Under the pieces are notes generated by a model. It searched no databases, had not been told where the DNA came from, and saw only the letters and a program-made list of their open reading frames with translations. From Macrostomum lignano (Eukaryota): a DNA stretch of 64,000 nt. The DNA lies in the NCBI GenBank assembly GCA_002269645.1, contig NIVC01002678.1, positions 62,001 to 126,000 on the forward strand, in the 5' to 3' direction. Below are positions 621-45,369 of the stretch, piece by piece. Numbering within the stretch: the stretch's first letter is position 1; every line of letters begins with the position of its first letter. A program made the position numbers and the translations under genes.

Positions 621-789
621 CAGGCCAGAGGAAGGGGTGGGGCAAGCCTGGGTGGGGTCGGGCAAGCCCAGTAGAGGGTTCGGGCAGGCCGGATTAGGGG
701 GTCGAGAGCAGGCCCAGGGGCAGGGTCGAGAAGGCCAAGGGTGGGATCGGGCAGGCCGGTCGAGCAGGTTGGATAAGGGTCACACAGCT

Positions 790-4004: not shown

Positions 4005-4187
4005 TGTAGCGTTAGGTTACCGCTACAAGCTTACGAGTGTATGTGGCACTTCGAAGATAGCTAGCAAAAGCGGGAGGCTTTTTAGTATATTTTGTCATTG
4101 CGTTGGGGGCTATTTAGCGCTGGGGCGAACGAATAGTACAGAAGTGTCTATGGGTGAACTAAAGCGATTGGAATATAGAATAAGAAA
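4005..4187 (-). repeat. 3' LTR of Gypsy A, left piece (183 bp)
   Basis: Matches 45370-45552 with no difference seen by eye. Confidence 0.95.
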
Positions 4188-4800
4188 CTAGCAATAGTTG
4201 ACCCCCCTTCGGGGAGAGTATTTAGTACAGTTATTTATCGCAATTGATTAACTAATATTCATAATAATCTCTCTTATTCACCGTATCTATAATTCAATAT
4301 CTCAATAATTCAATATGAATATTCATAAATCAATTTTTATATTCATTCTTATTCATAGGTCTCATTCATTTAGTCATTAATATTTTATTACACTACAATA
4401 CACCACAGAAAGAAAGAACTCAAGCTATCTCCATTACAGAATAGAGGATCGAAAAGTAAGAAGGAGAATGTTGGCTATAGACAATTATAGCAATTTTAGC
4501 CCCCTCCGGGGAGATGCTCAGGTTCAGAGCAATGAATTGATTATATTATTTATTTGAAAACAATAGTTATTTTTTTTGTATTATTCTCTTATTTTTTACT
4601 GAATCAGATGCATACAGCGTTTATTGTATTATTTTTTTTAGTATCAACAATCAATCAGAATTATTATCAGAATAACATTGCTGCTTCTGCAACACCCAAC
4701 CCCGGAGATTGACAGTGTGCACTTTATTGTTATTAAACTTAGCAGCTGCAACACCCAACACCAGAGATTGACTGTGTTGCTTTATCAATGACAATTCTTT

Positions 4801-5340
4801 TTAATCGTCCTCATTGATAGTAGAATGCGACGGTCCAGCGATTGGAATAGACTCCATTTGGCCCAGTGACACGTCGCCTCCGCGTTTGTCTCGCGAAAAA
4901 ATAATTTCGTCTCCGCAGCGTACTTGCATTATTTGTACATTGCGGAATGATGCGAACATTTCAGGAGAGCACTGGAACACAAATGTGTCCCTCCGAACTT
5001 CCTGGTTATCAGGCGGTCTCGCAGTCGATTGGGTCTTTTGGACTGGCTCAAAGATTTGCTGACTCGACTGAGCCCTTTCAAACCACTCCGTCAAGTCAGA
5101 GTCATTGGCAGGATATTGGCGAACATTGGCCCTGGTACAATTTAGCGAAATATCATTGCCATATTCTTGCACTTGGGCTCCTTGAACCTCTAGGGTGTCG
5201 CCCACAGTCCAGTGATTCACCAGACTTGCACTGTCGGCCCAGAATGTGCAGGAGACAGACGATGCCGAGTCATCGACCAGTGTCACCTTGGCCAAGTTAG
5301 TGGTAGTTCCTCGTTTTGTTTGGATTTCCCTTTGCGCCAT
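4801..5340 (-). CDS. RPA70-like OB-fold ssDNA-binding protein (Helitron-encoded)
   Basis: In-frame upstream KVDIRGVISST, then KVTLVDDSASSVSCTFW...LEVQGAQVQEYGNDISLN, resembling RPA70 DBD-B. Confidence 0.7.
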   Translation of the reverse strand: MAQREIQTKRGTTTNLAKVTLVDDSASSVSCTFWADSASLVNHWTVGDTLEVQGAQVQEYGNDISLNCTRANVRQYPANDSDLTEWFERAQSSQQIFEPVQKTQSTARPPDNQEVRRDTFVFQCSPEMFASFRNVQIMQVRCGDEIIFSRDKRGGDVSLGQMESIPIAGPSHSTINEDD

Positions 5341-5465
5341 AGTACTGGAAATGACGCCTCGAATGTCAACCTTCCTACATGACCATTGAAGAATTTTGCC
5401 ATTAATTGTTAATCACATCCAAAACGAATGTTGCTTAGAATGAATGGTACGAGTACGACTTTAAC

Positions 5466-7392
5466 TTACTTTCTCAGTGTAAAGGTTGAGAGAACGCCAA
5501 TTTTTATGTACTGGGCTTTGCGCTGCTGGACAATTTCGTTGCTAGCAACAAGGACTCCATCTTTATCCACTGACAGAGTCATTTCGAGCTCGTTGTCGGT
5601 TGAGTTGTACATAGAATTTGAGGCTTTCAACCAACCACCAGATACGCGCACGGCCGTAGCGTTTTTTGCCAGGTCGATGCCCACGGTGTCGAGCGACTGG
5701 CCCTGTGACTTGTGGATCGTCAGGCAAAAGCTCGGCTTAACTGGGAACTGCAGCCGCTTGAAGCAGACTGGCAGGTCAGCATTGTTAGGCTGCAGCGGAA
5801 TCCTCGGCAGTAAGATTTCATCACCCGAGAACTGGCCGGCAGCGACCTTGCAGCGCAGCACGTTCTCGCCCAGCTCCAGGATGATCAGCCGGGTGCCGTT
5901 GCACAGCCTTGGCGGATTCAGATTCCGCAGCAGAACCAGCGGCATGCCCACCTTGAGCTTAAGCAGGTGAGTAGGAAAGTTCGGAGCATCCAGCTGGTTC
6001 AGCAGCTCCGGAGGAAAGTGCGTGGCCGCTTCCTCGTCAGCCACGCTGTCCACTGAGCGATACTCTCGCAGTTGGCCTGGGAACATTGCCAGGCACTCGC
6101 TGTTGATCGCGTCAACCGCATCGTTGTAGGGCGCCAGGATTGCCCGGCTTGAAAAGTAGCCGTCACGCTCCGCTGACGCCTCGAACGAAGGGTACACGAA
6201 CTGGATCAGCGCGGAGAGCGGCGCCTCTGCCGGAATGACGATCTCGGCAGGAAGGCGGACTGTGTCATCCGACTGATCAGCCGGCCCTGAGCCGATCTGT
6301 GCGGGATGTGCAGAAAATGCATGAGAATCTCATGTTGCCACGCTCATATAAGCAGCAAGAGAAATATTCACCTGCATGAGCAGTTGCATATAGCGATTGT
6401 ACAGCTCAGCATCAGCACAGCGTTGCAGCCGGATGTTCTTAGAAAGTCTGTGCCTGTGGAATAAAGGCCACAGATTAGATTTGCTTACACAAGCTAAAAT
6501 GTTGTTTGCCCTGGTGCCATTCTGCACCACCGGCAGCAGCTGGCGAAAGTCTCCAGCGCAGACCAAAACGATGCCGCCGAATGGACGGTCTTGCTTCCGT
6601 AGGTCTCGGAGACTGCGGTCGACAGCCTCCAGATCCTTCCGATTCGTCATGGAGATTTCATCCCAGACTATAAGCCGCACGGTGCGAAACACTGCGGCCT
6701 GTCTTGATTGGGCTCGGACAGAACACACGTCCTTGTCGGTGCGAACCAGCCGCACTGGGATCTTGAATGTCGAATGCGCCGTCTGTCCACCCGGCAGCAG
6801 GGTGGCTGCGATGCCAGACGACGCAACGGCGAGTGCGACTTCCCCTCGACTACGCACAAGCGCCAGCAGAACCTCAAGCAAGAAGGTCTTGCCGGTGCCT
6901 GCGGGAGCGTCAAGGAAATGCAGCCCACCTGAGCCATTGTAAATATCCTCAGTCACGGCCTCATAGATGACCCGCTGCTCAGCCGTCAGCATTGGCAGCC
7001 GCGTCTCTGTGATCTCCGCCTGCTCGACCGTGTCGAACTGCTGCGGCCCGACTTGCGGCATAGCGGAGGCAGCAGGAAGTCCGTACTCTGGCAGACTGTT
7101 GCCGCCCATTGACGTCAGCATGCTCTGCAGCTCTCGCAGAGCCAAGTCGCTGACTTCCTCGGCGCTCAGGTCCGGGTTGTGGAATCGCAGGTCTTCGCAG
7201 AGATCCTCTGCAAAGCTGCTCCACAGGTTGGCGCCATCGTCTGGCTCTCCCCAGATGAGGACGACAGCCAGCAGGTGCCTCAGAGCTCGCGGCATTCGGG
7301 CAGTGGTGCCAGTGGTCATCGCGTTGCAGCAGGCCGAGAGCCATGCAGGCAGCCTTGGCGCTGACGAAATGAACACCGGCCACGGTCTGCAA
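5466..7392 (-). pseudogene. Helitron PIF1-like SF1B helicase, two exons (intron 6297-6371), motif VI damaged
   Basis: FLDAPAGTGKTFLL (Walker A), LIVWDEISM (Walker B), GDFRQLLPVV, AILAPYN, RNLNPPRLCNGTRL and TIHKSQGQSL. A GT-AG intron joins LLMQ to IGSG in frame. The expected FSHGQLYVALSR is reduced to TAVRVS. Confidence 0.92.
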
Positions 7393-7399
7393 CGACTCG

Positions 7400-7909
7400 A
7401 CAGGCTAACTCGTGCCGAAGGGTAGCGGCATCGGTTTCATGCGGTGTGCCACGTAGCTGGTCGCACACGGCATGAAAAAAGCAGTTGCCATCGCCAATGG
7501 TGGTATTGACCTGCAACTGACTAAAGGGCACAATAGATTCGACACAAGGTAACCTGGTGACAGATTCACCGCGCCGACAATCAGCCTGTCTCTGCCGCTG
7601 CTCTTCCAGACGGGTAATCCGCTCAGCCTCGTCCTCAGCAGCGCGAAACTCAGCCTGTCTCTGCCGCTGCTCTTCCAGACGGGCAATCCGCTCAGCCTCG
7701 TCTTCAGCAACGCGACACTCAGCCTGTCTCTGCCGCTGTTCCTCCAGACGGGCAATCCGCTCAGCCTCGTCTTCAGCAACGCGACATTCAGCCTGTCTCT
7801 GCCGCTGCTCTTCCAGACGGGCATCGCGCTCTCCAGCAGACTCGGCCAGTCGTCTTTTCTTTGCGTCACGGCTTCTCTTCAAATGGCTTGCGCCACGGCG
7901 CACCATCAT
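7400..7909 (-). pseudogene. Helitron N-terminal coiled-coil repeats plus truncated OTU protease
   Basis: About four 23-aa (69-bp) repeats AEDEAERIARLEEQRQRQAECRV, then TIGDGNCFFHAVCDQL (OTU catalytic Cys motif), then a jump into the pre-helicase linker (ACMALGLLQRDDHW). Confidence 0.8.
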
Positions 7910-8990
7910 ACAGTGGGGCTAAATAGATAAAGCACTATTAGAGGGTTCAAAAACCAAAGAAAAGAAAGAAGGAAAGGAAGCAGTGGGCTACATAAAAACC
8001 AAGCAGCCTACAGCTATTAGCATTATAATCTATGGCCAAAACCGTTTGCAAGCTCTCACTGCCGAAAAAATACATTAGCGAGATGGGCAAAAACCTGTTT
8101 TCTGACAATTGAGAGGCCTCTTTAATTTGGATAGCTTATTAAAAATACGTGTACCGATTCCGGACAATTTGCCATCTAATGGTGCAAAAACGGAGAAAAT
8201 CGGTCATTCCGTTCGCAAGATTTTCTGTTACAAGCAAACAAACAAACAAACAAACTCAACTTTAGTATATATATTAGTATATAAGACTAGCAATAGTTGA
8301 CCCCCCTTCGGGAGAGTATTTAGTACAGTTATTTATCGCAATTGATTAACTAATATTCATAATAATCTCTCTTATTCACCGTATCTATAATTCAATATGA
8401 ATATTCATAAATCAATTTTTATATTCATTCTTATTCATAGGTCTCATTCATTTAGTCATTAATATTTTATTACACTACAATACACCACAGAAAGAAAGAA
8501 CTCAAGCTATCTCCATTACAGAATAGAGGATCGAAAAGTAAGAAGGAGAATGTTGGCTATAGACAATTATAGCAATTTTAGCCCCCCTCCGGGGAGATGC
8601 TCAGGTTCAGAGCAATGAATTGATTATATTATTTATTTGAAAACAATAGTTATTTTTTCTTGTATTATTCTCTTATTTTTTACTGAATCAGATGCATACA
8701 GCGTTTATTGTATTATTTTTTTAGTATCAACAATCAATCAGAATTATTATCAGAATAACATTGCTGCTTCTGCAACACCCAACCCCGGAGATTGACAGTG
8801 TGCACTTTATTGTTATTAAACTTAGCAGCTGCAACACCCAACACCAGAGATTGACTGTGTTGCTTTATCAATGACAATTCTTTTTAATCGTCCTCATTGA
8901 TAGTAGAATGCGACGGTCCAGCGATTGGAGTAGACTCCATTTGGCCCAGTGACACGTCGCCTCCGCGTTTGTCTCGCGAAAAAATAAAAT

Positions 8991-9516
8991 GACAGACTTG
9001 ACGGTGGCACAAACTTCAACGTTCAAGTGGCATGCGAACTGGAGCAGCAGGTCAGGGTTGTATGACACAACCCACCTAGAGAAAGAAGAAGAAGAAGAAG
9101 ATAGGAAAGATAGGAAGATAGGATTTAACTGTATAGTACAGAAATGCTATGGCTAAGCATCTGCAGACTCACCTGTTGTCCATTCGGATGCTGCGGCCCT
9201 TGAACAGTTTGTCCACCGTGAAGCCTCCCATCTCGGGAGAGCGCCTCCTGTAGAACGGGTACCCGGTGTCGCTGGTCAGCGTCTCCGGCTGAAAGTCCTT
9301 CGGGAAGGCCTTGCTGCACTTGCCGTTCTCCATGCAAGGGCAGGCCGGGTTCAGCTCGCCACACGGTCCGTGGATCATGTGGATCTTGACCAGCTCGTAC
9401 AGCACTGGCTGCCGCTGTGGGTCTGGGATCTCCGCAGACACGATGGCATCGTAGCGATCCGGAGTGACTCGACTTCCGTTTGCCAGCCACAGCAGAAAGT
9501 GCACATGGGGAAGGCC
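8991..9516 (-). pseudogene. Helitron HUH Rep fragment (intron 9076-9172)
   Basis: GLPHVHFLLW (HUH), SAEIPD, HMIHGPCG, CSKAFPK, GYPFYRRR and DNR|WVVSYNPDLLLQFACHLNVEVCATVKSV. It ends just before the catalytic YxxKY motif. Confidence 0.9.
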
Positions 9517-9529
9517 TGTGTTGAATGTT

Positions 9530-10036
9530 TTATAAATAAGTAATGTCTATAGCGGCATCGGTTTCATGCGGTGTGCCACGTAGCTGGTCGCACACGGCAT
9601 GAAAAAAGCAGTTGCCATCGCCAATGGTGGTATTGACCTGCAACTGACTAAAGGGCACAATAGATTCGACACAAGGTAACCTGGTGACAGATTCACCGCG
9701 CCGACAATCAGCCTGTCTCTGCCGCTGCTCTTCCAGACGGGTAATCCGCTCAGCCTCGTCCTCAGCAGCGCGAAACTCAGCCTGTCTCTGCCGCTGCTCT
9801 TCCAGACGGGCAATCCGCTCAGCCTCGTCTTCAGCAACGCGACACTCAGCCTGTCTCTGCCGCTGTTCCTCCAGACGGGCAATCCGCTCAGCCTCGTCTT
9901 CAGCAACGCGACATTCAGCCTGTCTCTGCCGCTGCTCTTCCAGACGGGCATCGCGCTCTCCAGCAGACTCGGCCAGTCGTCTTTTCTTTGCGTCACGGAT
10001 TCTCTTCAAATGGCTTGCGCCACGGCGCACCATCAT
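9530..10036 (-). pseudogene. Coiled-coil repeats plus truncated OTU (copy 2)
   Basis: Near-identical to 7430-7909 and diverges after ETDAA. Confidence 0.8.
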
Positions 10037-10413
10037 ACAGTGGGGCTAAATAGATAAAGCACTATTAGAGGGTTCAAAAACCAAAGAAAAGAAAGAAGGA
10101 AAGGAAGCAGTGGGCTACATAAAAACCAAGCAGCCTACAGCTATTAGCATTATAATCTATGGCCAAAACCGTTTGCAAGCTCTCACTGCCGAAAAAATAC
10201 ATTAGCGAGATGGGCAAAAACCTGTTTTCTGACAATTGAGAGGCCTCTTTAATTTGGATAGCTTATTAAAAATACGTGTACCGATTCCGGACAATTTGCC
10301 ATCTAATGGTGCAAAAACGGAGAAAATCGGTCATTCCGTTCGCAAGATTTTCTGTTACAAGCAAACAAACAAACAAACAAACTCAACTTTAGTATATATA
10401 TTAGTATATAAGA

Positions 10414-12540
10414 CTAGCAATAGTTGACCCCCCTTCGGGGAGAGTATTTAGTACAGTTATTTATCGCAATTGATTAACTAATATTCATAATAATCTCTCT
10501 TATTCACCGTATCTATAATTCAATATGAATATTCATAAATCAATTTTTATATTCATTCTTATTCATAGGTCTCATTCATTTAGTCATTAATATTTTATTA
10601 CACTACAATACACCACAGAAAGAAAGAACTCAAGCTATCTCCATTACAGAATAGAGGATCGAAAAGTAAGAAGGAGAATGTTGGCTATAGACAATTATAG
10701 CAATTTTAGCCCCCCTCCGGGGAGATGCTCAGGTTCAGAGCAATGAATTGATTATATTATTTATTTGAAAACAATAGTTATTTTTTCTTGTATTATTCTC
10801 TTATTTTTTACTGAATCAGATGCATACAGCGTTTATTGTATTATTTTTTTAGTATCAACAATCAATCAGAATTATTATCAGAATAACATTGCTGCTTCTG
10901 CAACACCCAACCCCGGAGATTGACAGTGTGCACTTTATTGTTATTAAACTTAGCAGCTGCAACACCCAACACCAGAGATTGACTGTGTTGCTTTATCAAT
11001 GACAATTCTTTTTAATCGTCCTCATTGATAGTAGAATGCGACGGTCCAGCGATTGGAGTAGACTCCATTTGGCCCAGTGACACGTCGCCTCCGCGTTTGT
11101 CTCGCGAAAAAATAAAATGACAGACTTGACGGTGGCACAAACTTCAACGTTCAAGTGGCATGCGAACTGGAGCAGCAGGTCAGGGTTGTATGACACAACC
11201 CACCTAGAGAAAGAAGAAGAAGAAGAAGATAGGAAAGATAGGAAGATAGGATTTAACTGTATAGTACAGAAATGCTATGGCTAAGCATCTGCAGACTCAC
11301 CTGTTGTCCATTCGGATGCTGCGGCCCTTGAACAGTTTGTCCACCGTGAAGCCTCCCATCTCGGGAGAGCGCCTCCTGTAGAACGGGTACCCGGTGTCGC
11401 TGGTCAGCGTCTCCGGCTGAAAGTCCTTCGGGAAGGCCTTGCTGCACTTGCCGTTCTCCATGCAAGGGCAGGCCGGGTTCAGCTCGCCACACGGTCCGTG
11501 GATCATGTGGATCTTGACCAGCTCGTACAGCACTGGCTGCCGCTGTGGGTCTGGGATCTCCGCAGACACGATGGCATCGTAGCGATCCGGAGTGACTCGA
11601 CTTCCGTTTGCCAGCCACAGCAGAAAGTGCACATGGGGAAGGCCTGTGTTGAATGTTTTATAAATAAGTAATGTCTATAGCGGCATCGGTTTCATGCGGT
11701 GTGCCACGTAGCTGGTCGCACACGGCATGAAAAAAGCAGTTGCCATCGCCAATGGTGGTATTGACCTGCAACTGACTAAAGGGCACAATAGATTCGACAC
11801 AAGGTAACCTGGTGACAGATTCACCGCGCCGACAATCAGCCTGTCTCTGCCGCTGCTCTTCCAGACGGGTAATCCGCTCAGCCTCGTCCTCAGCAGCGCG
11901 AAACTCAGCCTGTCTCTGCCGCTGCTCTTCCAGACGGGCAATCCGCTCAGCCTCGTCTTCAGCAACGCGACACTCAGCCTGTCTCTGCCGCTGTTCCTCC
12001 AGACGGGCAATCCGCTCAGCCTCGTCTTCAGCAACGCGACATTCAGCCTGTCTCTGCCGCTGCTCTTCCAGACGGGCATCGCGCTCTCCAGCAGACTCGG
12101 CCAGTCGTCTTTTCTTTGCGTCACGGCTTCTCTTCAAATGGCTTGCGCCACGGCGCACCATCATACAGTGGGGCTAAATAGATAAAGCACTATTAGATGG
12201 TTCAAAAACCAAAGAAAAGAAAGAAGGAAAGGAAGCAGTGGGCTACATAAAAACCAAGCAGCCTACAGCTATTAGCATTATAATCTATGGCCAAAACCGT
12301 TTGCAAGCTCTCACTGCCGAAAAAATACATTAGCGAGATGGGCAAAAACCTGTTTTCTGACAATTGAGAGGCCTCTTTAATTTGGATAGCTTATTAAAAA
12401 TACGTGTACCGATTCCGGACAATTTGCCATCTAATGGTGCAAAAACGGAGAAAATCGGTCATTCCGTTCGCAAGATTTTCTGTTACAAGCAAACAAACAA
12501 ACAAACAAACTCAACTTTAGTATATATTTAGTATATAAGA
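10414..12540 (-). mobile_element. Helitron family A deletion derivative, unit 3 (near-identical tandem copy of unit 2)
   Basis: Offset 2127-2128 bp with only a few SNPs/indels. Rep fragment at 11119-11644; coiled-coil/OTU at 11658-12164. Confidence 0.92.
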
Positions 12541-24750: not shown

Positions 24751-24782
<32 letters not shown>

Positions 24783-30700: not shown

Positions 30701-31633
30701 GATTGTACGTTCACTGCCTGCTAAAGAGGCTCGCAAGTTTATGCATTGAATTTCAAGGTTCAACAAAATCACAGGGCTGCCTATTGAAAATTAGAACACA
30801 AATCTTTGCGCAATTGTCTATACAGTCAGCCAGTGAGCCAGGGTCCGATTGTACACAGGCAGCCATTTAGAACGCCCCATCCCCCACTGGAGAGAAAATA
30901 CACTGCAGAGATAGGGAAAAGTTGTGGCGCAATCACTTGAAATTCATGCAAATTTTCAGCTCCAAGCAGAAAGAGGGGACAATTAAGATTATCAAAGGTC
31001 AAGACCGCCGTTTTCTGCTTTTTTGAGGATCTTAGAAATTAAAATTTCAGAATTAAAATAGCCTATAGCCGACCTCGGATAATTTCCAATCTTCCCATAT
31101 AAGTTTCAACGCTGAGTTGCCACTATTCAAGGAGGAGTTGTCGAAATGACAGACACACAGACAGACATACAGACAAACAACACGTCAACTTTAGTATTAA
31201 GACGAGTGGAACTCCTCCTTCGGAGGAGAAAGGGGAAGAACTCCCATCACCGGAATTCCATTCCCTGAATTATCCATCAACTGAAATTCCATGTCTTGAA
31301 CCCCATCTTCCAAATCATCTCCAAATTCTTTACAAACCTTTCAAAGACCATAGCTCAAAGACTCTTACGTCTCTCATATCTACTCTCTCCTCTCTTCGCT
31401 ATTATCGTGACTCTCTTCTCTCTCCTCTCTCTCATCTCATCTCTACCCCTACTTCCTTATTTATCTCTTCTCCCTCGTCTTTCGTCTGTACCCCCTCCTG
31501 TCTCCTCTGTTCTCTGTTCTATCACATCTCTATTCTTCACTTCTGTCTCCTGTCTCCTCTCTTCTCTCTTATCTCTCCTTCTTCTCTTCTCTCTCATATG
31601 TCATCTCTACTCACTTATCTATCGTCTCTCTTA

Positions 31634-31710
<77 letters not shown>

Positions 31711-34462
31711 TCTCATTTCTTATATCTCATATACGGTCTCAGACTCTACTTTCTTGTCTCCCATCTTTCTTTCCTCCTTTCCACTACCCCCGTCTCTTCT
31801 CTTCTCTCTTTTCTAATCTCTAATCTCTTCTCTCTTATGTTCTCACTCATCTCTTCTCCTCGCATCTCTCATCTCTCCTCTCCTCACTACTTCCCTCTCT
31901 TAACTCTCTCATCTCTGATTTTTCATCTCTCTCCTCTCTCCTCTCGCTCTTTTCCTTTCGCTTCTCTCTCCTCCCTCTCCTCTCATCTCTACTACTTTAT
32001 TTATATCTTCTCCCTCGTCTTTCGTCTCTACTCTCGTCTGTCTCCTTTCTCCCCTTTTTTCTCCTCTTTTCTCTCTTCTCTCTCCGCTCCTCTCTCATCT
32101 CTCATCCCTCATCTCACTCTTTCTTTCTCCTATTATCTCTCTTGTCTCCCTTTGCTATCTCATATATCCACTCTTATCTCCTCTCTCCTCTTCGCTTTTC
32201 TGTCCTTCGTTCCCGCCTTAATCCCCTCTTCTCTCCAATCTGTCATGTCTAATCTCTCCACTCATTTCTACTCTGTTTTCTACCATCTCATATCTCTTCT
32301 CTTTTCATTCTTCTTTTTATTCTCTTCTCTGACTGATTGAAGATGCCAAATCAATCAAGATCCTCTCCGCGAAGCAGAAATCCTGTCCGTGCAACTGAAA
32401 ACCATCGAAATCCTCTCCGTGAAACTGAAGAGAATCGAAATCCTCTCCGCGAAACAGAAATCCTCTCCGTGAAACTGAAAACCATCGAAATTCTTTCTTT
32501 TAAACTGGACTCAATCGAAATTTTCTCCGTCAAAAAGAATAAATATCAGGATTCATTGGTTATTGTTAAGGGTTAGGGTTAGAGCTACACACAGCTGCGT
32601 GTTCAAATAAAAAATGAACCAATTGAATCAATTGATTGCGCAACCGATTTCACAGTCAGTCAGTATCAGTCTCAGTTAAAGTTAGCAAAAAAATTGCGCA
32701 ATCTAAATCAACCCTCCAGTACACAGAGACCGACCCCTTTTCAATACGCAGTGGCAGTTAGAAATTGAACCTCAAACTTTTGGGGGCATTGAACAAAAAA
32801 ATGAGTACAATCTTTGCATAAAGCTAAAAGTATGGAAATGGTTTTTTGAAACATTTTATATCCTCGAACTCAGCGTTGCAAGATCTTTTCAGCAGTATAA
32901 GTCTCTTCTCTTAAAGTTTAGAACTCGAAGAGCAGTTAGCGTTTGAAAGTTCCCGTTTTAAAGCATTGAAATGTCGCGTGTACGTTCACTGCCTGCCAAA
33001 GAGGCTCGCAAGTTTATTCATTTACTACACAGGCCGGCTATTACACAGGGCAGCCTATTGAAAGGCACAGATAATAAAACAAAATTGATGGCGCAACTGA
33101 TTTCACAGTATGTCAGTATCAGTCTCAGTTACAGTTAACAAAAAGATTGCGCAATCTAAATCAACCCTCCAATACACAGCGCCCGACCGCCTTCCACTAC
33201 GCAGTGGCAATTAGCAATTGAACCCCCCAAATTTATCTCTGACCTATCGCAAAAATAAGTACAATCTTTGCAGCAAGTTAAAAGTAAAAGTAATAAAATC
33301 GTTTTTTGAATGCTGTGCTTTTAATTTTTACAGTTAAAGCAAACAACTTATATCCCTGAACTCAGCGTTGCAAGATCTTTCCAGCAATATAAGTCTCTCC
33401 TCTCAAAGTTCAAAAATCGAGCAACAGTTAGCATTTGAAACTTTCTGATTTAAAGCATTGAAATATCGAGTGTACGTTCACTGCCTGCTAGAGAGGCTCG
33501 CAAATTGATGCATTGAATTTCACTGTCCGCCAGTTAGCTAGGGTCCAAGTGTACACACGCCGCCACTGAGAACGCTCCTATCCCCCCACTGGAGAGAAAA
33601 TACACTGCCAAGTTAGCAAAATTTTATGGCGCAATCACTTAAAATTCATGCAAATTTTCAGCTCCAAGCAGAAAGAGGGGACAATTAAGATTATCAAAGG
33701 TCAAGACCGCCGTTTTCTGCTTTTTTGAGGATCTTAGAAATTAAAATTTCAGAATTAAAATAGCCTATAGCCGACCTCGGATAATTTCCAATCTTCCCAT
33801 ATAAGTTTCAACGCTGAGTTGGCACTATTCAAGGAGGAGTTGTCGAAATGACAGACAGACATACAGACAGACATACAGACAGACATACAGACAGACAAAC
33901 AACGCGTCAACTTTAGTATATATAGAGATAGATAGATTTTCTTTTCAAAGTTTAAAACTCGAGGAACAGTTAGCGTTTGAAACTGTCTGATTTATAGCAT
34001 TGAAGTATGGAGTGTACGTTCACTGCCTGCTTGCAAGTTGATGCATTGAATTTCAATGTCCAACAAATACACAGGGCTGCCCATTGAGAGGCAGGAAAAC
34101 TTATCAGTAGCCATATCATTGCGCAATTATCTATACAGTCAGCCAGTGAGCCAGGGTCCAAGTGTACACACGCAGCCACTGAGAACGCTCCCACCCCCCC
34201 ACTGGAAAGAAAATACACTACAGAGATAGGGAAAAGTTGTGGCGCAATCACTAAAAATTCGTGCATTTTTTCAGCTCCAAGCAGAAAGAGGGGACAATTA
34301 AGATTATCAAAGGTCAAGATTCAAGTTTTCTGCTTTTTTAAGGATCTTAGAAATTAAAATTTCAGAATTAAAATAGCCTATAGCCGACCTCGGATAATTT
34401 CCAATCTTCCCATATAAGTTTCAACGCTGAGTTGCCACTATTCAAGGAGGAGTTGTCGAAAT

Positions 34463-34494
<32 letters not shown>

Positions 34495-34946
34495 ACGCGT
34501 CAACTTTAGTATATACGAGTGGAACTCCTCCTTCGGAGGAGAAAGGGGAAGAACTCCCATCACCGGAATTCCATTCCCTGAATTATCCATCAACTGAAAT
34601 TCCATGTCTTGAACCCCATCTTCCAAATCGTCTCCAAATTCTTTACAAACCTTTCAAAGACCATAGCTCAAAGACTCTTACGTCTCTCATATCTACTCTC
34701 TCCTCTCTTCGCTATTATCGTGACTCTCTTCTCTCTCCTCTCTCTCATCTCATCTCTACCCCTACTTCCTTATTTATCTCTTCTTCCTCGTCTTTCGTCT
34801 GTACCCCCTCCTGTCTCCTCTGTTCTCTGTTCTATCACATCTCTATTCTTCACTTCTGTCTCCTGTCTCCTCTCTTCTCTCTTATCTCTCCTTCTTCTCT
34901 TCTCTCTCATATGTCATCTCTACTCACTTATCTATCGTCTCTCTTA

Positions 34947-35016
<70 letters not shown>

Positions 35017-37838
35017 CTGCTCTCATTTCTTATATCTCATATACGGTCTCAGACTCTACTTTCTTGTCTCCCATCTTTCTTTCCTCCTTTCCACTACCCC
35101 CCGTCTCTTCTCTTCTCTCTTTTCTAATCTCTAATCTCTTCTCTCTTATGTTCTCACTCATCTCTTCTCCTCGCATCTCTCATCTCTCCTCTCCTCACTA
35201 CTTCCCTCTCTTAACTCTCTCATCTCTGATTTTTCATCTCTCTCCTCTCTCCTCTCGCTCTTTTCCTTTCGCTTCTCTCTCCTCCCTCTCCTCTCATCTC
35301 TACTACTTTATTTATATCTTCTCCCTCGTCTTTCGTCTCTACTCTCGTCTGTCTCCTTTCTCCCCTTTTTTCTCCTCTTTTCTCTCTTCTCTCTCCGCTC
35401 CTCTCTCATCTCTCATCCCTCATCTCACTCTTTCTTTCTCCTCTACTCTCCCCTCTCTTCTATTTCCTCTGTACGCTCTTATCCTTCATCTATTCTCTCT
35501 CCTATTATCTCTCTTGTCTCCCTTTGCTATCTCATATATCCACTCTTATCTCCTCTCTCCTCTTCGCTTTTCTGTCCTTCGTTCCCGCCTTAATCCCCTC
35601 TTCTCTCCCATCTGTCATGTCTAATCTCTCCACTCATTTCTACTCTGTTTTCTACCATCTCATATCTCTTCTCTTTTCATTCTTCTTTTTATTCTCTTCT
35701 CTGACTGATTGAAGATGCCAAATCAATCAAGATCCTCTCCGCGAAGCAGAAATCCTGTCCGTGCAACTGAAAACCATCGAAATCCTCTCCGTGAAACTGA
35801 AGAGAATCGAAATCCTCTCCGCGAAACAGAAATCCTCTCCGTGAAACTGAAAACCATCGAAATTCTTTCTTTTAAACTGGACTCAATCGAAATTTTCTCC
35901 GTCAAAAAGAATAAATATCAGGATTCATTGGTTATTGTTAAGGGTTAGGGTTAGGGTTAGAGCTACACACAGCTGCGTGTTCAAATAAAAAATGAACCAA
36001 TTGAATCAATTGATTGCGCAACCGATTTCACAGTCAGTCAGTATCAGTCTCAGTTAAAGTTAGCAAAAAAATTGCGCAATCTAAATCAACCCTCCAGTAC
36101 ACAGAGACCGACCCCTTTTCAATACGCAGTGGCAGTTAGAAATTGAACCTCAAACTTTTGGGGGCATTGAACAAAAAAATGAGTACAATCTTTGCATAAA
36201 GCTAAAAGTATGGAAATGGTTTTTTGAAACATTTTATATCCTCGAACTCAGCGTTGCAAGATCTTTTCAGCAGTATAAGTCTCTTCTCTTAAAGTTTAGA
36301 ACTCGAAGAGCAGTTAGCGTTTGAAAGTTCCCGTTTTAAAGCATTGAAATGTCGCGTGTACGTTCACTGCCTGCCAAAGAGGCTCGCAAGTTTATTCATT
36401 TACTACACAGGCCGGCTATTACACAGGGCAGCCTATTGAAAGGCACAGATAATAAAACAAAATTGATGGCGCAACTGATTTCACAGTATGTCAGTATCAG
36501 TCTCAGTTACAGTTAACAAAAAGATTGCGCAATCTAAATCAACCCTCCAATACACAGCGCCCGACCGCCTTCCACTACGCAGTGGCAATTAGCAATTGAA
36601 CCCCCCAAATTTATCTCTGACCTATCGCAAAAATAAGTACAATCTTTGCAGCAAGTTAAAAGTAAAAGTAATAAAATCGTTTTTTGAATGCTGTGCTTTT
36701 AATTTTTACAGTTAAAGCAAACAACTTATATCCCTGAACTCAGCGTTGCAAGATCTTTCCAGCAATATAAGTCTCTCCTCTCAAAGTTCAAAAATCGAGC
36801 AACAGTTAGCATTTGAAACTTTCTGATTTAAAGCATTGAAATATCGAGTGTACGTTCACTGCCTGCTAGAGAGGCTCGCAAATTGATGCATTGAATTTCA
36901 CTGTCCGCCAGTTAGCTAGGGTCCAAGTGTACACACGCCGCCACTGAGAACGCTCCTATCCCCCCACTGGAGAGAAAATACACTGCCAAGTTAGCAAAAT
37001 TTTATGGCGCAATCACTTAAAATTCATGCAAATTTTCAGCTCCAAGCAGAAAGAGGGGACAATTAAGATTATCAAAGGTCAAGACCGCCGTTTTCTGCTT
37101 TTTTGAGGATCTTAGAAATTAAAATTTCAGAATTAAAATAGCCTATAGCCGACCTCGGATAATTTCCAATCTTCCCATATAAGTTTCAACGCTGAGTTGG
37201 CACTATTCAAGGAGGAGTTGTCGAAATGACAGACAGACATACAGACAGACATACAGACAGACATACAGACAGACAAACAACGCGTCAACTTTAGTATATA
37301 TAGAGATAGATAGATTTTCTTTTCAAAGTTTAAAACTCGAGGAACAGTTAGCGTTTGAAACTGTCTGATTTATAGCATTGAAGTATGGAGTGTACGTTCA
37401 CTGCCTGCTTGCAAGTTGATGCATTGAATTTCAATGTCCAACAAATACACAGGGCTGCCCATTGAGAGGCAGGAAAACTTATCAGTAGCCATATCATTGC
37501 GCAATTATCTATACAGTCAGCCAGTGAGCCAGGGTCCAAGTGTACACACGCAGCCACTGAGAACGCTCCCACCCCCCCTGGAAAGAAAATACACTACAGA
37601 GATAGGGAAAAGTTGTGGCGCAATCACTAAAAATTCGTGCATTTTTTCAGCTCCAAGCAGAAAGAGGGGACAATTAAGATTATCAAAGGTCAAGATTCAA
37701 GTTTTCTGCTTTTTTAAGGATCTTAGAAATTAAAATTTCAGAATTAAAATAGCCTATAGCCGACCTCGGATAATTTCCAATCTTCCCATATAAGTTTCAA
37801 CGCTGAGTTGCCACTATTCAAGGAGGAGTTGTCGAAAT

Positions 37839-37870
<32 letters not shown>

Positions 37871-38322
37871 ACGCGTCAACTTTAGTATATACGAGTGGAA
37901 CTCCTCCTTCGGAGGAGAAAGGGGAAGAACTCCCATCACCGGAATTCCATTCCCTGAATTATCCATCAACTGAAATTCCATGTCTTGAACCCCATCTTCC
38001 AAATCGTCTCCAAATTCTTTACAAACCTTTCAAAGACCATAGCTCAAAGACTCTTACGTCTCTCATATCTACTCTCTCCTCTCTTCGCTATTATCGTGAC
38101 TCTCTTCTCTCTCCTCTCTCTCATCTCATCTCTACCCCTACTTCCTTATTTATCTCTTCTTCCTCGTCTTTCGTCTGTACCCCCTCCTGTCTCCTCTGTT
38201 CTCTGTTCTATCACATCTCTATTCTTCACTTCTGTCTCCTGTCTCCTCTCTTCTCTCTTATCTCTCCTTCTTCTCTTCTCTCTCATATGTCATCTCTACT
38301 CACTTATCTATCGTCTCTCTTA

Positions 38323-38405
<83 letters not shown>

Positions 38406-40670
38406 TCTCATTTCTTATATCTCATATACGGTCTCAGACTCTACTTTCTTGTCTCCCATCTTTCTTTCCTCCTTTCCACTACCCCCCGTCTCTTCTCTTC
38501 TCTCTTTTCTAATCTCTAATCTCTTCTCTCTTATGTTCTCACTCATCTCTTCTCCTCGCATCTCTCATCTCTCCTCTCCTCACTACTTCCCTCTCTTAAC
38601 TCTCTCATCTCTGATTTTTCATCTCTCTCCTCTCTCCTCTCGCTCTTTTCCTTTCGCTTCTCTCTCCTCCCTCTCCTCTCATCTCTACTACTTTATTTAT
38701 ATCTTCTCCCTCGTCTTTCGTCTCTACTCTCGTCTGTCTCCTTTCTCCCCTTTTTTCTCCTCTTTTCTCTCTTCTCTCTCCGCTCCTCTCTCATCTCTCA
38801 TCCCTCATCTCACTCTTTCTTTCTCCTATTATCTCTCTTGTCTCCCTTTGCTATCTCATATATCCACTCTTATCTCCTCTCTCCTCTTCGCTTTTCTGTC
38901 CTTCGTTCCCGCCTTAATCCCCTCTTCTCTCCAATCTGTCATGTCTAATCTCTCCACTCATTTCTACTCTGTTTTCTACCATCTCATATCTCTTCTCTTT
39001 TCATTCTTCTTTTTATTCTCTTCTCTGACTGATTGAAGATGCCAAATCAATCAAGATCCTCTCCGCGAAGCAGAAATCCTGTCCGTGCAACTGAAAACCA
39101 TCGAAATCCTCTCCGTGAAACTGAAGAGAATCGAAATCCTCTCCGCGAAACAGAAATCCTCTCCGTGAAACTGAAAACCATCGAAATTCTTTCTTTTAAA
39201 CTGGACTCAATCGAAATTTTCTCCGTCAAAAAGAATAAATATCAGGATTCATTGGTTATTGTTAAGGGTTAGGGTTAGGGTTAGAGCTACACACAGCTGC
39301 GTGTTCAAATAAAAAATGAACCAATTGAATCAATTGATTGCGCAACCGATTTCACAGTCAGTCAGTATCAGTCTCAGTTAAAGTTAGCAAAAAAATTGCG
39401 CAATCTAAATCAACCCTCCAGTACACAGAGACCGACCCCTTTTCAATACGCAGTGGCAGTTAGAAATTGAACCTCAAACTTTTGGGGGCATTGAACAAAA
39501 AAATGAGTACAATCTTTGCATAAAGCTAAAAGTATGGAAATGGTTTTTTGAAACATTTTATATCCTCGAACTCAGCGTTGCAAGATCTTTTCAGCAGTAT
39601 AAGTCTCTTCTCTTAAAGTTTAGAACTCGAAGAGCAGTTAGCGTTTGAAAGTTCCCGTTTTAAAGCATTGAAATGTCGCGTGTACGTTCACTGCCTGCCA
39701 AAGAGGCTCGCAAGTTTATTCATTTACTACACAGGCCGGCTATTACACAGGGCAGCCTATTGAAAGGCACAGATAATAAAACAAAATTGATGGCGCAACT
39801 GATTTCACAGTATGTCAGTATCAGTCTCAGTTACAGTTAACAAAAAGATTGCGCAATCTAAATCAACCCTCCAATACACAGCGCCCGACCGCCTTCCACT
39901 ACGCAGTGGCAATTAGCAATTGAACCCCCCAAATTTATCTCTGACCTATCGCAAAAATAAGTACAATCTTTGCAGCAAGTTAAAAGTAAAAGTAATAAAA
40001 TCGTTTTTTGAATGCTGTGCTTTTAATTTTTACAGTTAAAGCAAACAACTTATATCCCTGAACTCAGCGTTGCAAGATCTTTCCAGCAATATAAGTCTCT
40101 CCTCTCAAAGTTCAAAAATCGAGCAACAGTTAGCATTTGAAACTTTCTGATTTAAAGCATTGAAATATCGAGTGTACGTTCACTGCCTGCTAGAGAGGCT
40201 CGCAAATTGATGCATTGAATTTCACTGTCCGCCAGTTAGCTAGGGTCCAAGTGTACACACGCCGCCACTGAGAACGCTCCTATCCCCCACTGGAGAGAAA
40301 ATACACTGCCAAGTTAGCAAAATTTTATGGCGCAATCACTTAAAATTCATGCAAATTTTCAGCTCCAAGCAGAAAGAGGGGACAATTAAGATTATCAAAG
40401 GTCAAGACCGCCGTTTTCTGCTTTTTTGAGGATCTTAGAAATTAAAATTTCAGAATTAAAATAGCCTATAGCCGACCTCGGATAATTTCCAATCTTCCCA
40501 TATAAGTTTCAACGCTGAGTTGGCACTATTCAAGGAGGAGTTGTCGAAATGACAGACAGACATACAGACAGACATACAGACAGACATACAGACAGACAAA
40601 CAACGCGTCAACTTTAGTATATATAGATAGATAGATAGATAGAGATAGATATAGATAGAGAGAAAGAAGA
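22165..40670 (-). mobile_element. Non-autonomous Helitron family D, long units (2.6-3.0 kb) interspersed with three 3'-truncated units of about 575 bp
   Basis: Long units: 22165-24803, 24804-27605, 27606-30630, 31203-33936, 34516-37314, 37892-40670. Short units: 30631-31202, 33937-34515, 37315-37891. Each long unit runs hairpin, CT-rich block, GAAACTGAA minisatellite, (TTAGGG)n, 2-3 copies of a module of about 490 bp, (GACA)n, then the 5' end. Confidence 0.8.
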
Positions 40671-41184
40671 TTGAATCTCGACCCGTCCTAACTATTGCTA
40701 TTTACACTCAGCCCAAGCCCAACCCCCCCATTCTGATTAAATTAACTGCACCCCCAACACGCGGAGGTTTTATTTGCATTTGCACCCACCCCCCCCCCTC
40801 CCCCCAAATACACAGCGACCCGCGGGCGGAGGTTGGGGTGGCTATTTTTACAAACAGACTGCAACCCCTCTACTGGAGAGACAGAGTGGCCACAGGAGGG
40901 CCAAAGAAGGTTAGGAAATTAGTTTTCTGCTTTTTTAGGGATCTCAAAATGAGAAAATGAAATATTAAAATAGCTATAAACCCAGTCCGGAAAATTTGCA
41001 GTTTTCCCATATAAGTTTCAACGCTGACTTGCCAGTAGTTTAGGAGAAAAATTGCAACACACATACATACAGACAAACAAACAAACATCGCACCACTTTT
41101 AGTATTAAGAAGAAAATTGCAACACACATACATACATACAAACAAACAAACATCGCACCACTTTTAGTATTAAGAAGAAGAAGA
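40671..41184 (-). mobile_element. 3'-truncated family D unit plus a duplicated 5' terminus of about 70 bp
   Basis: 40671-41110 repeats 20399-20836; 41114-41184 re-duplicates the terminal segment; ends in TCTTCTTCTTCTTAATACTAAAAG. Confidence 0.8.
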
Positions 41185-41222
41185 TAATTAGAATAAATGA
41201 TGAATGCTTTGGTGCTGCTACA
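41185..41222 (-). repeat. 3' LTR of Gypsy A, right piece (38 bp)
   Basis: TAATTAGAATAAATGATGAATGCTTTGGTGCTGCTACA equals 45553-45590. Confidence 0.95.
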
Positions 41223-41240
41223 AGATACTCCCCCTTCCCC
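41223..41240 (-). other. Polypurine tract of Gypsy A
   Basis: Minus strand GGGGAAGGGGGAGTATCT immediately before the 3' LTR. Confidence 0.8.
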
Positions 41241-41383
41241 ATAACGGAGTACTTCTAGGATTAAAACAACGAATTAACAGGAGGGAAATTTGGGGTAACA
41301 GATTCATGGCGCTACTTCTCTAGAATCAAATTGTCAAGTGTAATCAAGGAGTGTAGAATCAAGTCAAGTCAAGAAGTGTAGTA

Positions 41384-45324: not shown

Positions 45325-45355
45325 TGTCGTAGTCGTCGAGTGTTGGGATTGCACG

Positions 45356-45366
45356 CTCTGCTACCA
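45356..45366 (-). other. Primer-binding site (initiator tRNA-Met type)
   Basis: TGGTAGCAGAG lies 3 nt inside the 5' LTR and is complementary to the CUCUGCUACCA 3' end of animal tRNA-iMet. Confidence 0.75.
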
Positions 45367-45369
45367 ATT

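What the first reader, a model, noticed from the sequence alone, without database searches (positions are those of the whole stretch)
4188..41184. A 37-kb polarised stack of Helitrons from at least four families, joined head-to-tail with no spacer, inserted at one A|T inside an LTR
Seen: removing 4188-41184 restores the Gypsy LTR exactly (...taagaaa|taattag...). The insert begins TC and ends hairpin-CTAG on the minus strand. All of the roughly 19 units share one orientation, and 3' CTAG/CTCG ends directly abut the next 5' end (for example tataaga|ctag at 8286, 12540 and 16891; ttaaga|cgag at 31202). Established: Helitron1 elements insert at A|T without TSD, and same-family tandem arrays from rolling-circle replication are known. 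Inference: precise junctions between unrelated families suggest that a resident Helitron terminus is itself the preferred target, building an ordered cassette-like array reminiscent of an integron but driven by an HUH Rep. The alternative is one giant read-through transposon.
Basis: partly seen in the sequence, partly recalled or inferred. Interest (0 to 1): 0.85.

Follow-up and report, generated by a model that had tools for sequence, protein, structure and literature searches.

The report
Head-to-tail Helitron array inside an LTR
A 37-kb one-directional stack of rolling-circle transposons (Helitrons) from four families sits at a single A|T site inside a very young flatworm retrotransposon LTR, and most likely arrived already assembled; this is a large, cleanly dated example of a known Helitron behaviour, not a new kind of element.

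Summary
Removing 4188-41184 (36,997 bp) restores the LTR exactly, as shown by the intact sister LTR at 45370-45590. The insert lies on the minus strand, starts with TC and ends with hairpin-CTAG. It contains 14 Helitron 3' ends and 19 5' ends, all in one orientation, grouped as D×8, C, B×2, A×3.

All 13 internal 3'|5' junctions lack a spacer, and seven read exactly CT[AC]G|TC. The four families share no internal sequence, but they share one 5' terminal motif (TAWATACTAAA). They are therefore probably partners of one transposase rather than unrelated elements.

The two LTRs are identical (221/221) and gag-pol is intact, so the insertion is recent. Most units differ from their relatives by 5-30%, and families sit in blocks. 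Only U2/U3 and U12-14 (about 0.1% divergence) could have arisen here.

At least five independent precise junctions still require end-directed joining somewhere. Heterologous CTAG|TC junctions, tandem arrays, 3'-end bypass and multi-terminus composites are all published. The host is Macrostomum.

The parts
4001..4004 (.). AGTA target-site duplication of the Gypsy element (left copy). The right copy is at 45591-45594.
   Evidence: Read directly from the sequence.
4005..4187 (-). Distal 183 bp of the interrupted Gypsy LTR. This is the 3' LTR in the element's own (minus-strand) orientation.
   Evidence: 183/183 identical to 45370-45552.
4188..41184 (-). The whole Helitron array, 36,997 bp. The outer 5' end (TC...) is at 41184 and the outer 3' end (hairpin-CTAG) is at 4188. 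It lies between a host A and a host T.
4188..8286 (-). U1, family A, 4099 bp. An internally deleted autonomous Helitron that keeps the PIF1 helicase, the Pif1 2B domain and an RPA-like OB domain but has lost Rep.
   Evidence: Pfam hits. 98.6-99.5% nucleotide identity to the Logan contig L001, with L001 283-3461 and 5215-5966 missing.
8287..10413 (-). U2, family A, 2127 bp. A different internal-deletion derivative, made of L001 1-257 + 2275-2837 + 6732-end.
10414..12540 (-). U3, family A, 2127 bp. A near-identical tandem copy of U2 (2 mismatches in 2126).
12541..14981 (-). U4, family B, 2441 bp, non-autonomous, carrying a 30-bp minisatellite. Its 3' CTAG abuts the 5' TC of U3, giving the B|A hetero-family junction.
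14982..16891 (-). U5, family B, 1910 bp. K2P distance to U4 is 0.049.
16892..19546 (-). U6, family C, 2655 bp. It is the N-terminal part (STPR repeats, OTU-like GDGNCFF motif, Cys-rich region) of a second RepHel lineage, about 50% amino-acid identity to family A. It forms the C|B junction at 16892 and the D|C junction at 19547.
19547..20836 (-). U7, short D' element, 1290 bp. Its 5' 439 bp (20398-20836) is 99.3% identical to 40670-41108.
20837..22164 (-). U8, short D' element, 1328 bp.
22165..24805 (-). U9, full-length D element, 2641 bp.
24806..27605 (-). U10, D element, 2800 bp. Its 3' end is degenerate (CACT instead of CACTCG).
27606..31202 (-). U11, composite D unit. It consists of a 3'-truncated D fragment d1 (30632-31202), then A|TC, then a full D element (27606-30631).
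31203..34515 (-). U12, composite D unit: d1 at 33928-34515 plus body at 31203-33927.
34516..37891 (-). U13, composite D unit: d1 at 37306-37891 plus body at 34516-37305. It differs from U12 by 3 mismatches in 3308.
37892..41184 (-). U14. It consists of a D body (37892-40628, 2-3 mismatches from the U12 and U13 bodies), a TCT/CTAT microsatellite, a truncated D' 5' segment (40672-41108) and a repeat of the 5' terminus with a 65-bp period (TRF 41048-41179; the extra copy occupies 41109-41184) that carries the outer TC end.
41185..41222 (-). Proximal 38 bp of the interrupted LTR.
   Evidence: 38/38 identical to 45553-45590.
41223..45369 (-). Internal region of the Gypsy element. It holds intact pol (41384-44599: PR-RT-RNaseH-integrase, 1071 aa) and gag (44482-45354, DUF7041). 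A PPT-like GGGGAAGGGGGAG lies next to the interrupted LTR, and the PBS TGGTAGCAGAGC lies next to the intact LTR.
   Evidence: sequence.
45370..45590 (-). Intact sister LTR (221 bp), which serves as the empty-site reference.

Best explanation
The insert is a composite, multi-terminus array of canonical (A|T-inserting, TC...CTRR) Helitrons in a Macrostomum genome. Its units belong to four sequence families that share one left-terminal motif, so one RepHel transposase probably mobilises all of them. That transposase is most likely the one encoded by the family-A autonomous element, which is present at about 99% identity in sequencing runs of the same or a very close organism.

The array was built up elsewhere over a long period by three processes:
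(i) end-directed head-to-tail joining of a Helitron 3' end to a resident Helitron 5' end. The likeliest route is that RepHel uses its normal nick at host-A|TC of a resident element as the target cut (inferred);
(ii) nested insertions at A|T inside the 5' part of resident D elements;
(iii) tandem duplication and divergence of units.

The whole stack was then copied as one transposon. Copying started at the outermost D'-type 5' end and ran through the internal 3' ends (3'-end bypass) to the family-A 3' end. The product integrated at one A|T in the U3 part of the 3' LTR of a freshly inserted Gypsy element. At or after arrival, two unit-level tandem amplifications occurred (U2 to U3, and the U12-U13-U14 bodies).

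Shown: the anatomy, the empty site, the relative ages and the shared termini. Inferred: the donor copy, the read-through and the target-nick mechanism.
For: - Exact empty site and canonical outer ends.
- All 14 3' ends and 19 5' ends lie on one strand. There is no Helitron-like sequence in the other 27 kb of the window.
- The LTRs are 221/221 identical and gag and pol are intact, so K is at most 0.0136 at 95%.
- Unit divergences: U4/U5 0.049, U9/U10 0.073, U9 and U10 vs U12 0.085-0.094, U11 vs the U12-U14 bodies 0.17 (0.16-0.17 against U10 and U12 as whole units), U7/U8 above 0.3. The probability of seeing no LTR difference is 0.012 at K=0.02 and 1.6e-5 at K=0.05.
- U11 and U12/13 share the same d1/body breakpoint, so they descend from one composite ancestor, yet they differ by 10-17%.
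- Families are contiguous (p=0.0017 after collapsing recent duplicates).
- Six of seven D|D junctions are non-canonical and fall into repeated types, as expected for old, duplicated junctions.
- The left-terminal core is shared across families, and the 3' design is shared across A, B and C.
- The autonomous family-A element carries Helitron_like_N with HUH and Tyr motifs, PIF1 and RPA. It is 98.6-99.5% identical to U1-U3.
- 3'-end bypass and precise CTAG|TC joints have been shown experimentally for Helraiser (PMC4778049).
Against: - No donor copy or second copy of the hetero-family junctions could be looked for.
- En bloc movement needs bypass of about 10-12 internal 3' ends. At least four of these are canonical hairpin-CTAG ends much like the one finally used.
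- By my recollection, 37 kb is at the upper end of reported Helitron sizes.
- Diverged units could instead be independent insertions from diverged source copies. The composite d1+body unit could itself be a dispersed family.
- Within family D, adjacency does not track similarity once recent duplicates are collapsed (p=0.03 for six units, 0.5 for four).
- The dating rests on a 221-bp LTR and assumes equal neutral rates.
Confidence: 0.58

Rival explanations
1. Stepwise growth in place. A first Helitron landed at the LTR A|T. Later Helitrons, or a few multi-unit chunks, were then inserted one after another exactly at the resident element's terminus, because RepHel prefers a resident end as its target.
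For: - At least five independent exact CT[AC]G|TC junctions need end-directed joining.
- All families share the left-terminal motif that a common RepHel would recognise at a resident 5' end.
- The same orientation throughout and the retained outer host A and T are as predicted.
- Maize lines carry one or both of two abutting unrelated Helitrons (PMC2267711).
- No 3'-end bypass is required.
- The U7 and U14 5' segments, 99.3% identical and 20 kb apart, could be two recent arrivals of one subfamily.
Against: - It needs about 11 separate events (or at least 4 chunk events) at one phosphodiester bond within the time in which a 221-bp LTR pair collected no change.
- It does not explain the family blocks without invoking four successive waves.
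- It does not explain the shared composite breakpoint of U11 and U12/13 at 10-17% divergence, unless that composite is itself a dispersed family.
- It does not explain the non-canonical D|D junctions.
Confidence: 0.22
2. A fresh hetero-concatemer. During a burst, RepHel joined the 3'-OH of one excised Helitron strand to the 5'-phosphotyrosine-linked end of another. This made a multi-family concatemer or circle, which then integrated once.
For: - Helraiser makes circles with exactly this CTAG|TC joint (PMC4778049).
- It needs one integration event, no donor array and no bypass.
- It would explain the near-identical tandem copies U2/U3 and U12-14.
Against: - Random joining would not sort units into family blocks (p=0.0017).
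- It would not yield diverged same-family neighbours or decayed junctions.
- I found no published evidence for trans-joining.
Confidence: 0.07
3. One small Helitron inserted, and the rest arose here by unequal crossing-over or replication slippage.
For: U2/U3 (2 mismatches in 2126) and the U12/13/14 bodies (2-3 mismatches in about 2720) are young enough to have arisen this way.
Against: - It cannot create four families with no shared internal sequence.
- It cannot produce 5-30% divergence inside an LTR pair with 0/221 differences.
Confidence: 0.03
4. Assembly artefact. The array, or its copy numbers, is a mis-join or an over-expansion of repeats.
For: - The region is highly repetitive.
- Two near-identical unit amplifications are the kind of feature assemblers get wrong.
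- No reads are available to check.
Against: - Both LTR halves flank the insert to the base, with canonical Helitron ends.
- Most units are distinct enough (5-30%) to assemble unambiguously.
- Junction sequences are internally consistent.
Confidence: 0.05

Closest known systems
Two abutting unrelated Helitrons in the maize r1 region (Du, Caronna, He and Dooner 2008, PMC2267711)
   Same: Head-to-tail orientation. The 3' CTAG is joined directly to the 5' TC of a different Helitron, with no intervening host A. The authors interpreted it as one Helitron inserting immediately next to a resident one, possibly between the host A and the T of the resident 5' end.
   Different: The maize case has two elements. 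This array has 14 3' ends from four families in 37 kb. Maize has presence/absence alleles proving separate events, whereas here the dating argues that most of the stack arrived together.
Same-family tandem Helitron arrays and rolling-circle concatemers (bat Helibat; plants; Xenopus; Hydractinia)
   Same: Precise head-to-tail junctions and unidirectional arrays (as cited in PMC2267711, PMC5876387, PMC12001565 and PMC11934779). U2/U3 and U12-14 fit this pattern.
   Different: Those arrays are mono-family. This array also has three hetero-family junctions and units of very different ages.
Helraiser circles and 3'-end bypass (Grabundzija et al. 2016, PMC4778049)
   Same: The circle joint is exactly CTAG|TC. 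The 3' hairpin acts as a leaky terminator, and read-through transduces downstream DNA. This supplies the mechanism invoked for en bloc movement.
   Different: The experiments show bypass of a single 3' end. Bypass of ten or more has not been shown.
Composite FoHeli Helitrons with multiple 5' termini (Chellapan et al. 2016, PMC5148889)
   Same: Repeats of the first 73-85 nt of the 5' terminus. Composites made by self-insertion and then mobilised from the outer 5' end. A tandem triple in Metarhizium is explained either by insertion into the 5' end or by rolling-circle replication. The terminus repeat with a 65-bp period at 41048-41179 and the d1+body units look the same.
   Different: Those are fungal, non-canonical Helitrons, and the composites are small.
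Integron cassette arrays
   Same: The only shared feature is the picture of an ordered, unidirectional stack added at one recombination point.
   Different: There is no tyrosine-recombinase integrase, no attI/attC and no promoter-driven cassette expression. The units are transposons rather than gene cassettes. Nothing shows that the order reflects order of acquisition.

Membership tests
Canonical Helitron (Helitron1 type) | Insertion between host 5'-A and T-3' without target-site duplication | tested here: met
   The paralogous empty site in the sister LTR reads AAGAAA|TAATTAG.
Canonical Helitron (Helitron1 type) | 5' terminus TC | tested here: met
   The outer end at 41184 is A|TCTTC.... Seven internal junctions and three nested 5' ends also start with TC. 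Six D-family internal 5' ends lack TC.
Canonical Helitron (Helitron1 type) | 3' terminus CTRR | tested here: met
   CTAG in families A, B and C, including the outer end. Family D ends in CTCG, which departs from CTRR. No D-type 3' end is seen at a host junction here.
Canonical Helitron (Helitron1 type) | GC-rich hairpin about 10 nt upstream of the 3' end | tested here: met
   Stems of 4-7 bp lie 9-15 nt from the end in all families. Stem sequences differ between families but remain paired. Single-sequence z-scores are weak (-0.9 to -2.0; about 0 for the U7 D' variant).
Canonical Helitron (Helitron1 type) | RepHel protein (HUH Rep with two Tyr, plus a Pif1-type helicase) | tested here: inconclusive
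   Inside the window only the helicase, 2B and RPA-OB domains (U1) and an N-terminal OTU/Cys-rich part (U6) survive, and no Rep is present. Logan contigs 98.6-99.5% identical to U1 carry Helitron_like_N with LPHVHFLL and KYxxKY motifs plus PIF1.
Canonical Helitron (Helitron1 type) | No terminal inverted repeats | tested here: met
   No inverted self-hits anywhere in the window.
Helentron / Helitron2 | T|T target, asymmetric terminal inverted repeats, APE endonuclease | tested here: not met
   The target is A|T, there are no inverted repeats, and Pfam finds no endonuclease domain in the ORFs scanned.
Rolling-circle concatemer (same-family tandem array) | Near-identical units joined 3' end to 5' end with a constant junction | tested here: met
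   This holds only for U2/U3 (2 mismatches in 2126) and U12/U13/U14 (2-3 mismatches in about 2720). The other units differ by 5-30%.
Integron-like cassette system | Dedicated integrase, an attachment site, and cassettes added in order at one end | tested here: not met
   No integrase or att-like sites are present. The family blocks and the dating argue against in-place ordered acquisition. The order of acquisition itself is not testable here.
Ty3/Gypsy LTR retrotransposon (the host of the insert) | LTR pair with TG...CA ends, TSD, PBS and PPT, and gag plus PR-RT-RNaseH-integrase in that order | tested here: met
   221-bp LTRs (TGTAG...CTACA), an AGTA target-site duplication, the domain order from Pfam, and gag DUF7041.

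The most novel reading that the evidence does not exclude
The boundary host-A|TC of a resident Helitron is a preferred target that RepHel recognises. The transposase's ordinary initiation nick would double as the target cut. Helitrons that share a left-terminal motif would then stack head-to-tail into multi-family arrays, and those arrays could themselves move as giant composite transposons. If so, the Macrostomum arrays would be a natural system showing target choice by an HUH transposase in a eukaryote.
Probability: 0.25. Interest if true: 0.65.

Novelty: new member of a known kind. Interest (0 to 1): 0.42.

Why it matters
The identical LTR pair gives this locus a time stamp, which Helitron arrays rarely have. 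It shows that a 37-kb array with 14 3' ends from four families came to occupy one A|T bond very recently.

If the array arrived as one piece, Helitron read-through can move tens of kilobases across many internal terminators. That would bear on how Helitrons capture and shuffle DNA and how they seed satellite-like arrays.

If the array grew in place, resident Helitron ends would be strong insertion targets. Either outcome can be tested with the genome and reads of this species. The locus also documents an apparently intact, recently active RepHel family in Macrostomum, a transgenic laboratory flatworm.

Tried and rejected
- A protein search with a concatenation of stop-free translations spanning the hetero-family and outer junctions found nothing. 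No external copies of the junctions could be recovered.
- Exact-product look-ups of window ORFs (RPA-OB ORF, second Gypsy ORF, two D-unit ORFs) returned nothing on record.
- A metagenome scan for the family-A 3' end gave 0 hits. A viral-contig scan for the D 3' end gave three hits that I take to be chance 17-mer matches and did not examine.
- The M. lignano loci L011 and L012 were scanned for the same termini and for generic hairpin-CTRR|T sites. No comparable array was found. L011 has 4.1-kb tandem units upstream of an autonomous Helitron, but I could not recognise Helitron ends in them.
- The Logan contig L013 (P0004) comes from another sample and has almost no nucleotide similarity to the window (a 228-bp stretch at 71% in the helicase region and a short low-complexity repeat).
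- The 90 nt upstream of the family-A 5' region in L002 does not match any 3' end in the window.
- Rfam found no RNA family in the window.
- The adjacency-similarity permutation test within family D looked significant (p=0.0028). The signal vanished once the near-identical U12-14 copies were collapsed, so I do not use it as evidence.
- My first estimate of 2-6% divergence for U14 against U12/13 was an artefact of the non-homologous 5' segment. The bodies differ by only 0.1%.


Full report

Yes. Window 4005-4187 is 183/183 identical to 45370-45552, and 41185-41222 is 38/38 identical to 45553-45590. The intact LTR reads ...GAATAAGAAA|TAATTAGAATAAATG.... The 36,997-bp stretch 4188-41184 therefore sits exactly between an A and a T, with no duplication or loss.

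The LTRs (221 bp, TGTAG...CTACA) belong to a minus-strand Ty3/Gypsy element spanning 4005-45590. It has an AGTA target-site duplication at 4001-4004 and 45591-45594. A tRNA-type primer-binding site lies next to the intact LTR and a purine tract lies next to the interrupted one. Its gag ORF (DUF7041) is 290 aa and its PR-RT-RNaseH-integrase ORF is 1071 aa. The insert lies 38 bp into the element's 3' LTR (U3). It must therefore postdate integration of this copy; otherwise both LTRs would carry it (inference from the retrotransposon replication scheme).

**2. Anatomy of the insert**

Read on the minus strand, the insert starts A|TCTTCTTCTTCTTAATACTAAAAG at 41184. It ends ...CTCCCCGAAGGGGGGTCAACTATTGCTAG|T at 4188.

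Exact-string searches find 14 3' ends of the form GC-hairpin, 9-15 nt, CT[AC]G. They lie at 4188, 8287, 10414, 12541, 14982, 16892, 19547, 20837, 22165, 24806 (degenerate), 27606, 31203, 34516 and 37892. There are 19 copies of a 5' motif. All are on the minus strand, and self-BLAST gives no inverted hit in the whole window.

A family-agnostic scan for a GC hairpin followed by CT[AC]G and T finds 11 sites. All are inside the insert and on the minus strand. Markov resamples give 0.36 expected, and none occurs in the other 27 kb.

All 13 internal 3' ends touch the next 5' motif without a spacer. Seven are exactly CT[AC]G|TC.

The 14 units sum to 36,997 bp. All-against-all BLAST sorts them into four groups with no internal similarity:
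- A: U1-U3 (4188-12540)
- B: U4-U5 (12541-16891)
- C: U6 (16892-19546)
- D: U7-U14 (19547-41184)

On the minus strand the order is D×8, C, B×2, A×3. Only three junctions are hetero-family.

**3. What the units are**

- **U1** carries PIF1, Pif1-2B and RPA-like OB domains but no Rep.
- **Family-A autonomous element.** Logan contigs from several runs (L001-L007) are 98.6-99.5% identical to U1-U3. They encode Helitron_like_N, PIF1 and RPA. The Rep has LPHVHFLL (HUH) and KYxxKY motifs, split by short introns.
- **U1 versus U2/U3.** They are different internal-deletion derivatives of that autonomous element.
- **U6** holds STPR repeats, an OTU-like motif and the Cys-rich N-terminus of a second RepHel lineage. 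It is about 50% identical at the amino-acid level to family A and 44% to an M. lignano protein.
- **B and D** are non-coding and rich in minisatellites.
- **U11-U13** are composites. Each has a 3'-truncated 580-bp D fragment (d1), then A|TC, then a full D element.
- **U14** has a truncated D' 5' segment in place of d1, plus a repeat of the 5' terminus with a 65-bp period (TRF 41048-41179).

**4. The families are not unrelated**

An alignment of the 5' ends shows an invariant core, TA(T/A)ATACTAAA, followed by a GT-rich leader in all four families. A, B and C also share the 3' design of C4-6 N4 G5-6, then 8-10 nt, then CTAG. D has a different hairpin and ends in CTCG. The simplest reading is that all are partners of the same or closely related RepHel (inference).

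**5. Dating**

The LTRs show 0 differences in 221 bp, which bounds their divergence at 1.36% (95%).

| Comparison | Mismatches / aligned | K2P |
|---|---|---|
| U2 vs U3 | 2 / 2126 | 0.0009 |
| U12, U13, U14 bodies | 2-3 / about 2720 | about 0.001 |
| U7 vs U14 5' segments | 3 / 439 | 0.007 |
| U4 vs U5 | | 0.049 |
| U9 vs U10 | | 0.073 |
| U9, U10 vs U12 | | 0.085-0.094 |
| U11 vs the U12-U14 bodies | | 0.17 |
| U7 vs U8 | | above 0.3 |

The chance of seeing no LTR difference is 0.012 at K=0.02 and 1.6e-5 at K=0.05.

U11 and U12/13 have the same d1/body breakpoint, so they descend from one composite ancestor, yet they differ by 10-17%. Families are contiguous, with p=0.0017 after collapsing the recent duplicates. 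Six of seven D|D junctions are non-canonical and fall into repeated types: CTCG|TTAATAC twice, CTCG|TATATAC twice, CTCG|TACATATAC once and CACT|TATATATAC once.

Together these results say that most of the array is older than its present site.

**6. Best explanation**

A long-lived composite array was assembled elsewhere. Three processes built it: end-directed head-to-tail joining, nested A|T insertions, and tandem duplication with divergence. It was then mobilised once, from its outer D'-type 5' end to the family-A 3' end, and integrated at one A|T in a young LTR. Two unit-level amplifications (K about 0.001) occurred at or after arrival.

The steps needed have experimental precedent. The 3' hairpin is a leaky terminator, and the CTAG|TC joint is the circle junction (PMC4778049).

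The weak points are these:
- About 10-12 internal 3' ends must have been bypassed, at least four of them canonical.
- No donor copy could be searched for.
- The diverged units could be separate arrivals from diverged sources.

I put this explanation at about 0.58.

**7.

The array has 2648 AT sites, about 72 per kb. At least five independently formed exact junctions exist: U2|U1, B|A, B|B, C|B and D'|C. At roughly 1 in 200 per event, random A|T insertion cannot explain them. Some end-directed process made them, here or at a donor site.

The most economical mechanism is that RepHel's normal nick at host-A|TC of a resident element serves as the target cut. This also explains the single orientation, the retained outer A and T, and the need for a shared left-terminal motif (inference). 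Du et al. raised the same possibility for maize.

Stepwise growth at this very site remains possible (about 0.22) but needs many events in a very short time. A freshly joined hetero-concatemer (0.07), in-place amplification alone (0.03) and misassembly (0.05) are less likely.

**8. Comparison with what is known**

- Precise CTAG|TC joints between two unrelated Helitrons, with alleles showing separate insertion: maize (PMC2267711).
- Same-family tandem arrays: bats, plants, Xenopus and Hydractinia.
- Multiple 5' termini, self-insertion composites and a tandem triple: Fusarium and Metarhizium (PMC5148889).

This locus combines all of these at unusual scale, in a flatworm, with a built-in clock. 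It is a new member of a known kind. The integron comparison is only pictorial.

**9. Organism**

The intronless MACPF/ephrin-receptor-like ORF at 59307-63674 is 95% identical to M. lignano BOX15_Mlig021963g3. It is 94.8% identical at the nucleotide level to contig NIVC01004190.1. The window therefore comes from Macrostomum lignano (another haplotype or subgenome) or a close congener.

**10. Limits**

No reads and no access to the rest of this genome were available. All attempts to reach other copies failed. The en bloc versus stepwise question is therefore argued from internal dating only.

Noticed in passing
window 20398-20836 and 40670-41108: The 5' 439 bp of U7 and the 5' segment of U14 are 99.3% identical (3 mismatches) although they lie 20.3 kb apart and the rest of the two units is unrelated or only about 80% similar. 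In U14 the segment stops at an A|T, where a TC-starting D element follows. In U7 the sequence continues as TTGGTTTT.... This could be a recent D' subfamily copy or a recombination event; I could not resolve which.
   Followed up: partly
window 41048-41179: A repeat of the outermost 5' terminus with a 65-bp period (2 copies, 98%). It resembles the 'multiple 5' termini' (73- and 85-nt repeats) described for Fusarium Helitrons.
   Followed up: partly
window 51268-57297: A 6-kb satellite with a 37-bp unit (about 165 copies, 88% matches; 73-bp higher-order period) and strong strand asymmetry (GC skew -0.37, AT skew -0.67). The paralogous M. lignano contig L012 has only a short, different repeat block at the matching place.
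   Followed up: partly
window 45635-46145: A 15/32/47-bp minisatellite (ACATGCTATTTCATG) begins about 45 bp after the Gypsy's right LTR, between that element and a second Gypsy-like element.
   Followed up: no
window 46332-50387: A second Gypsy-like element on the plus strand. Its protease/RT, RNaseH and integrase are split over three ORFs, so it is degenerate. No LTR pair for it was found in the window.
   Followed up: no
window 59307-63674: An intronless 1455-codon ORF encoding a MACPF domain followed by many ephrin-receptor-like/TNFR-type Cys repeats. It is 95% identical to an M. lignano protein, which identified the host genus.
   Followed up: partly
window 12915-13724 and 15291-15928; L012 3472-3849; L011 about 3484-3610 and 7539-7665: The 30-bp minisatellite carried by family-B Helitrons (TGACATCTCAGCAATTCCCCCAGTAAGCCT) also occurs in two unrelated M. 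lignano contigs at 80-87% identity. This suggests the family, or its satellite, is dispersed in the genus.
   Followed up: partly
L011 999-4906 and 5096-9023: Upstream of an autonomous Helitron gene in M. lignano contig NIVC01002606.1 there are two tandem units of about 4.1 kb (87.5% identical). They carry a 23-bp satellite and fragments resembling families B and D. I could not recognise Helitron termini at their borders.
   Followed up: partly
window 7575-7831, 9702-9958, 11830-12086: A 69-bp tandem repeat (3.7 copies) sits in the 5' region of every family-A unit, and the Logan contigs break there. It overlaps a minus-strand ORF that has no Pfam hit.
   Followed up: no
L002 1-90: In one Logan contig the family-A 5' region is joined at CTAAAGTTGAG to an unrelated 90-nt sequence instead of TCTTATATACTAATATATATA. 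The autonomous copy may therefore have a different or rearranged 5' terminus.
   Followed up: partly
window 1-4000: A GC-rich (about 50%) region to the left of the Gypsy element. Its 194-aa ORF (1177-1761) has no Pfam hit. I did not examine it further.
   Followed up: no
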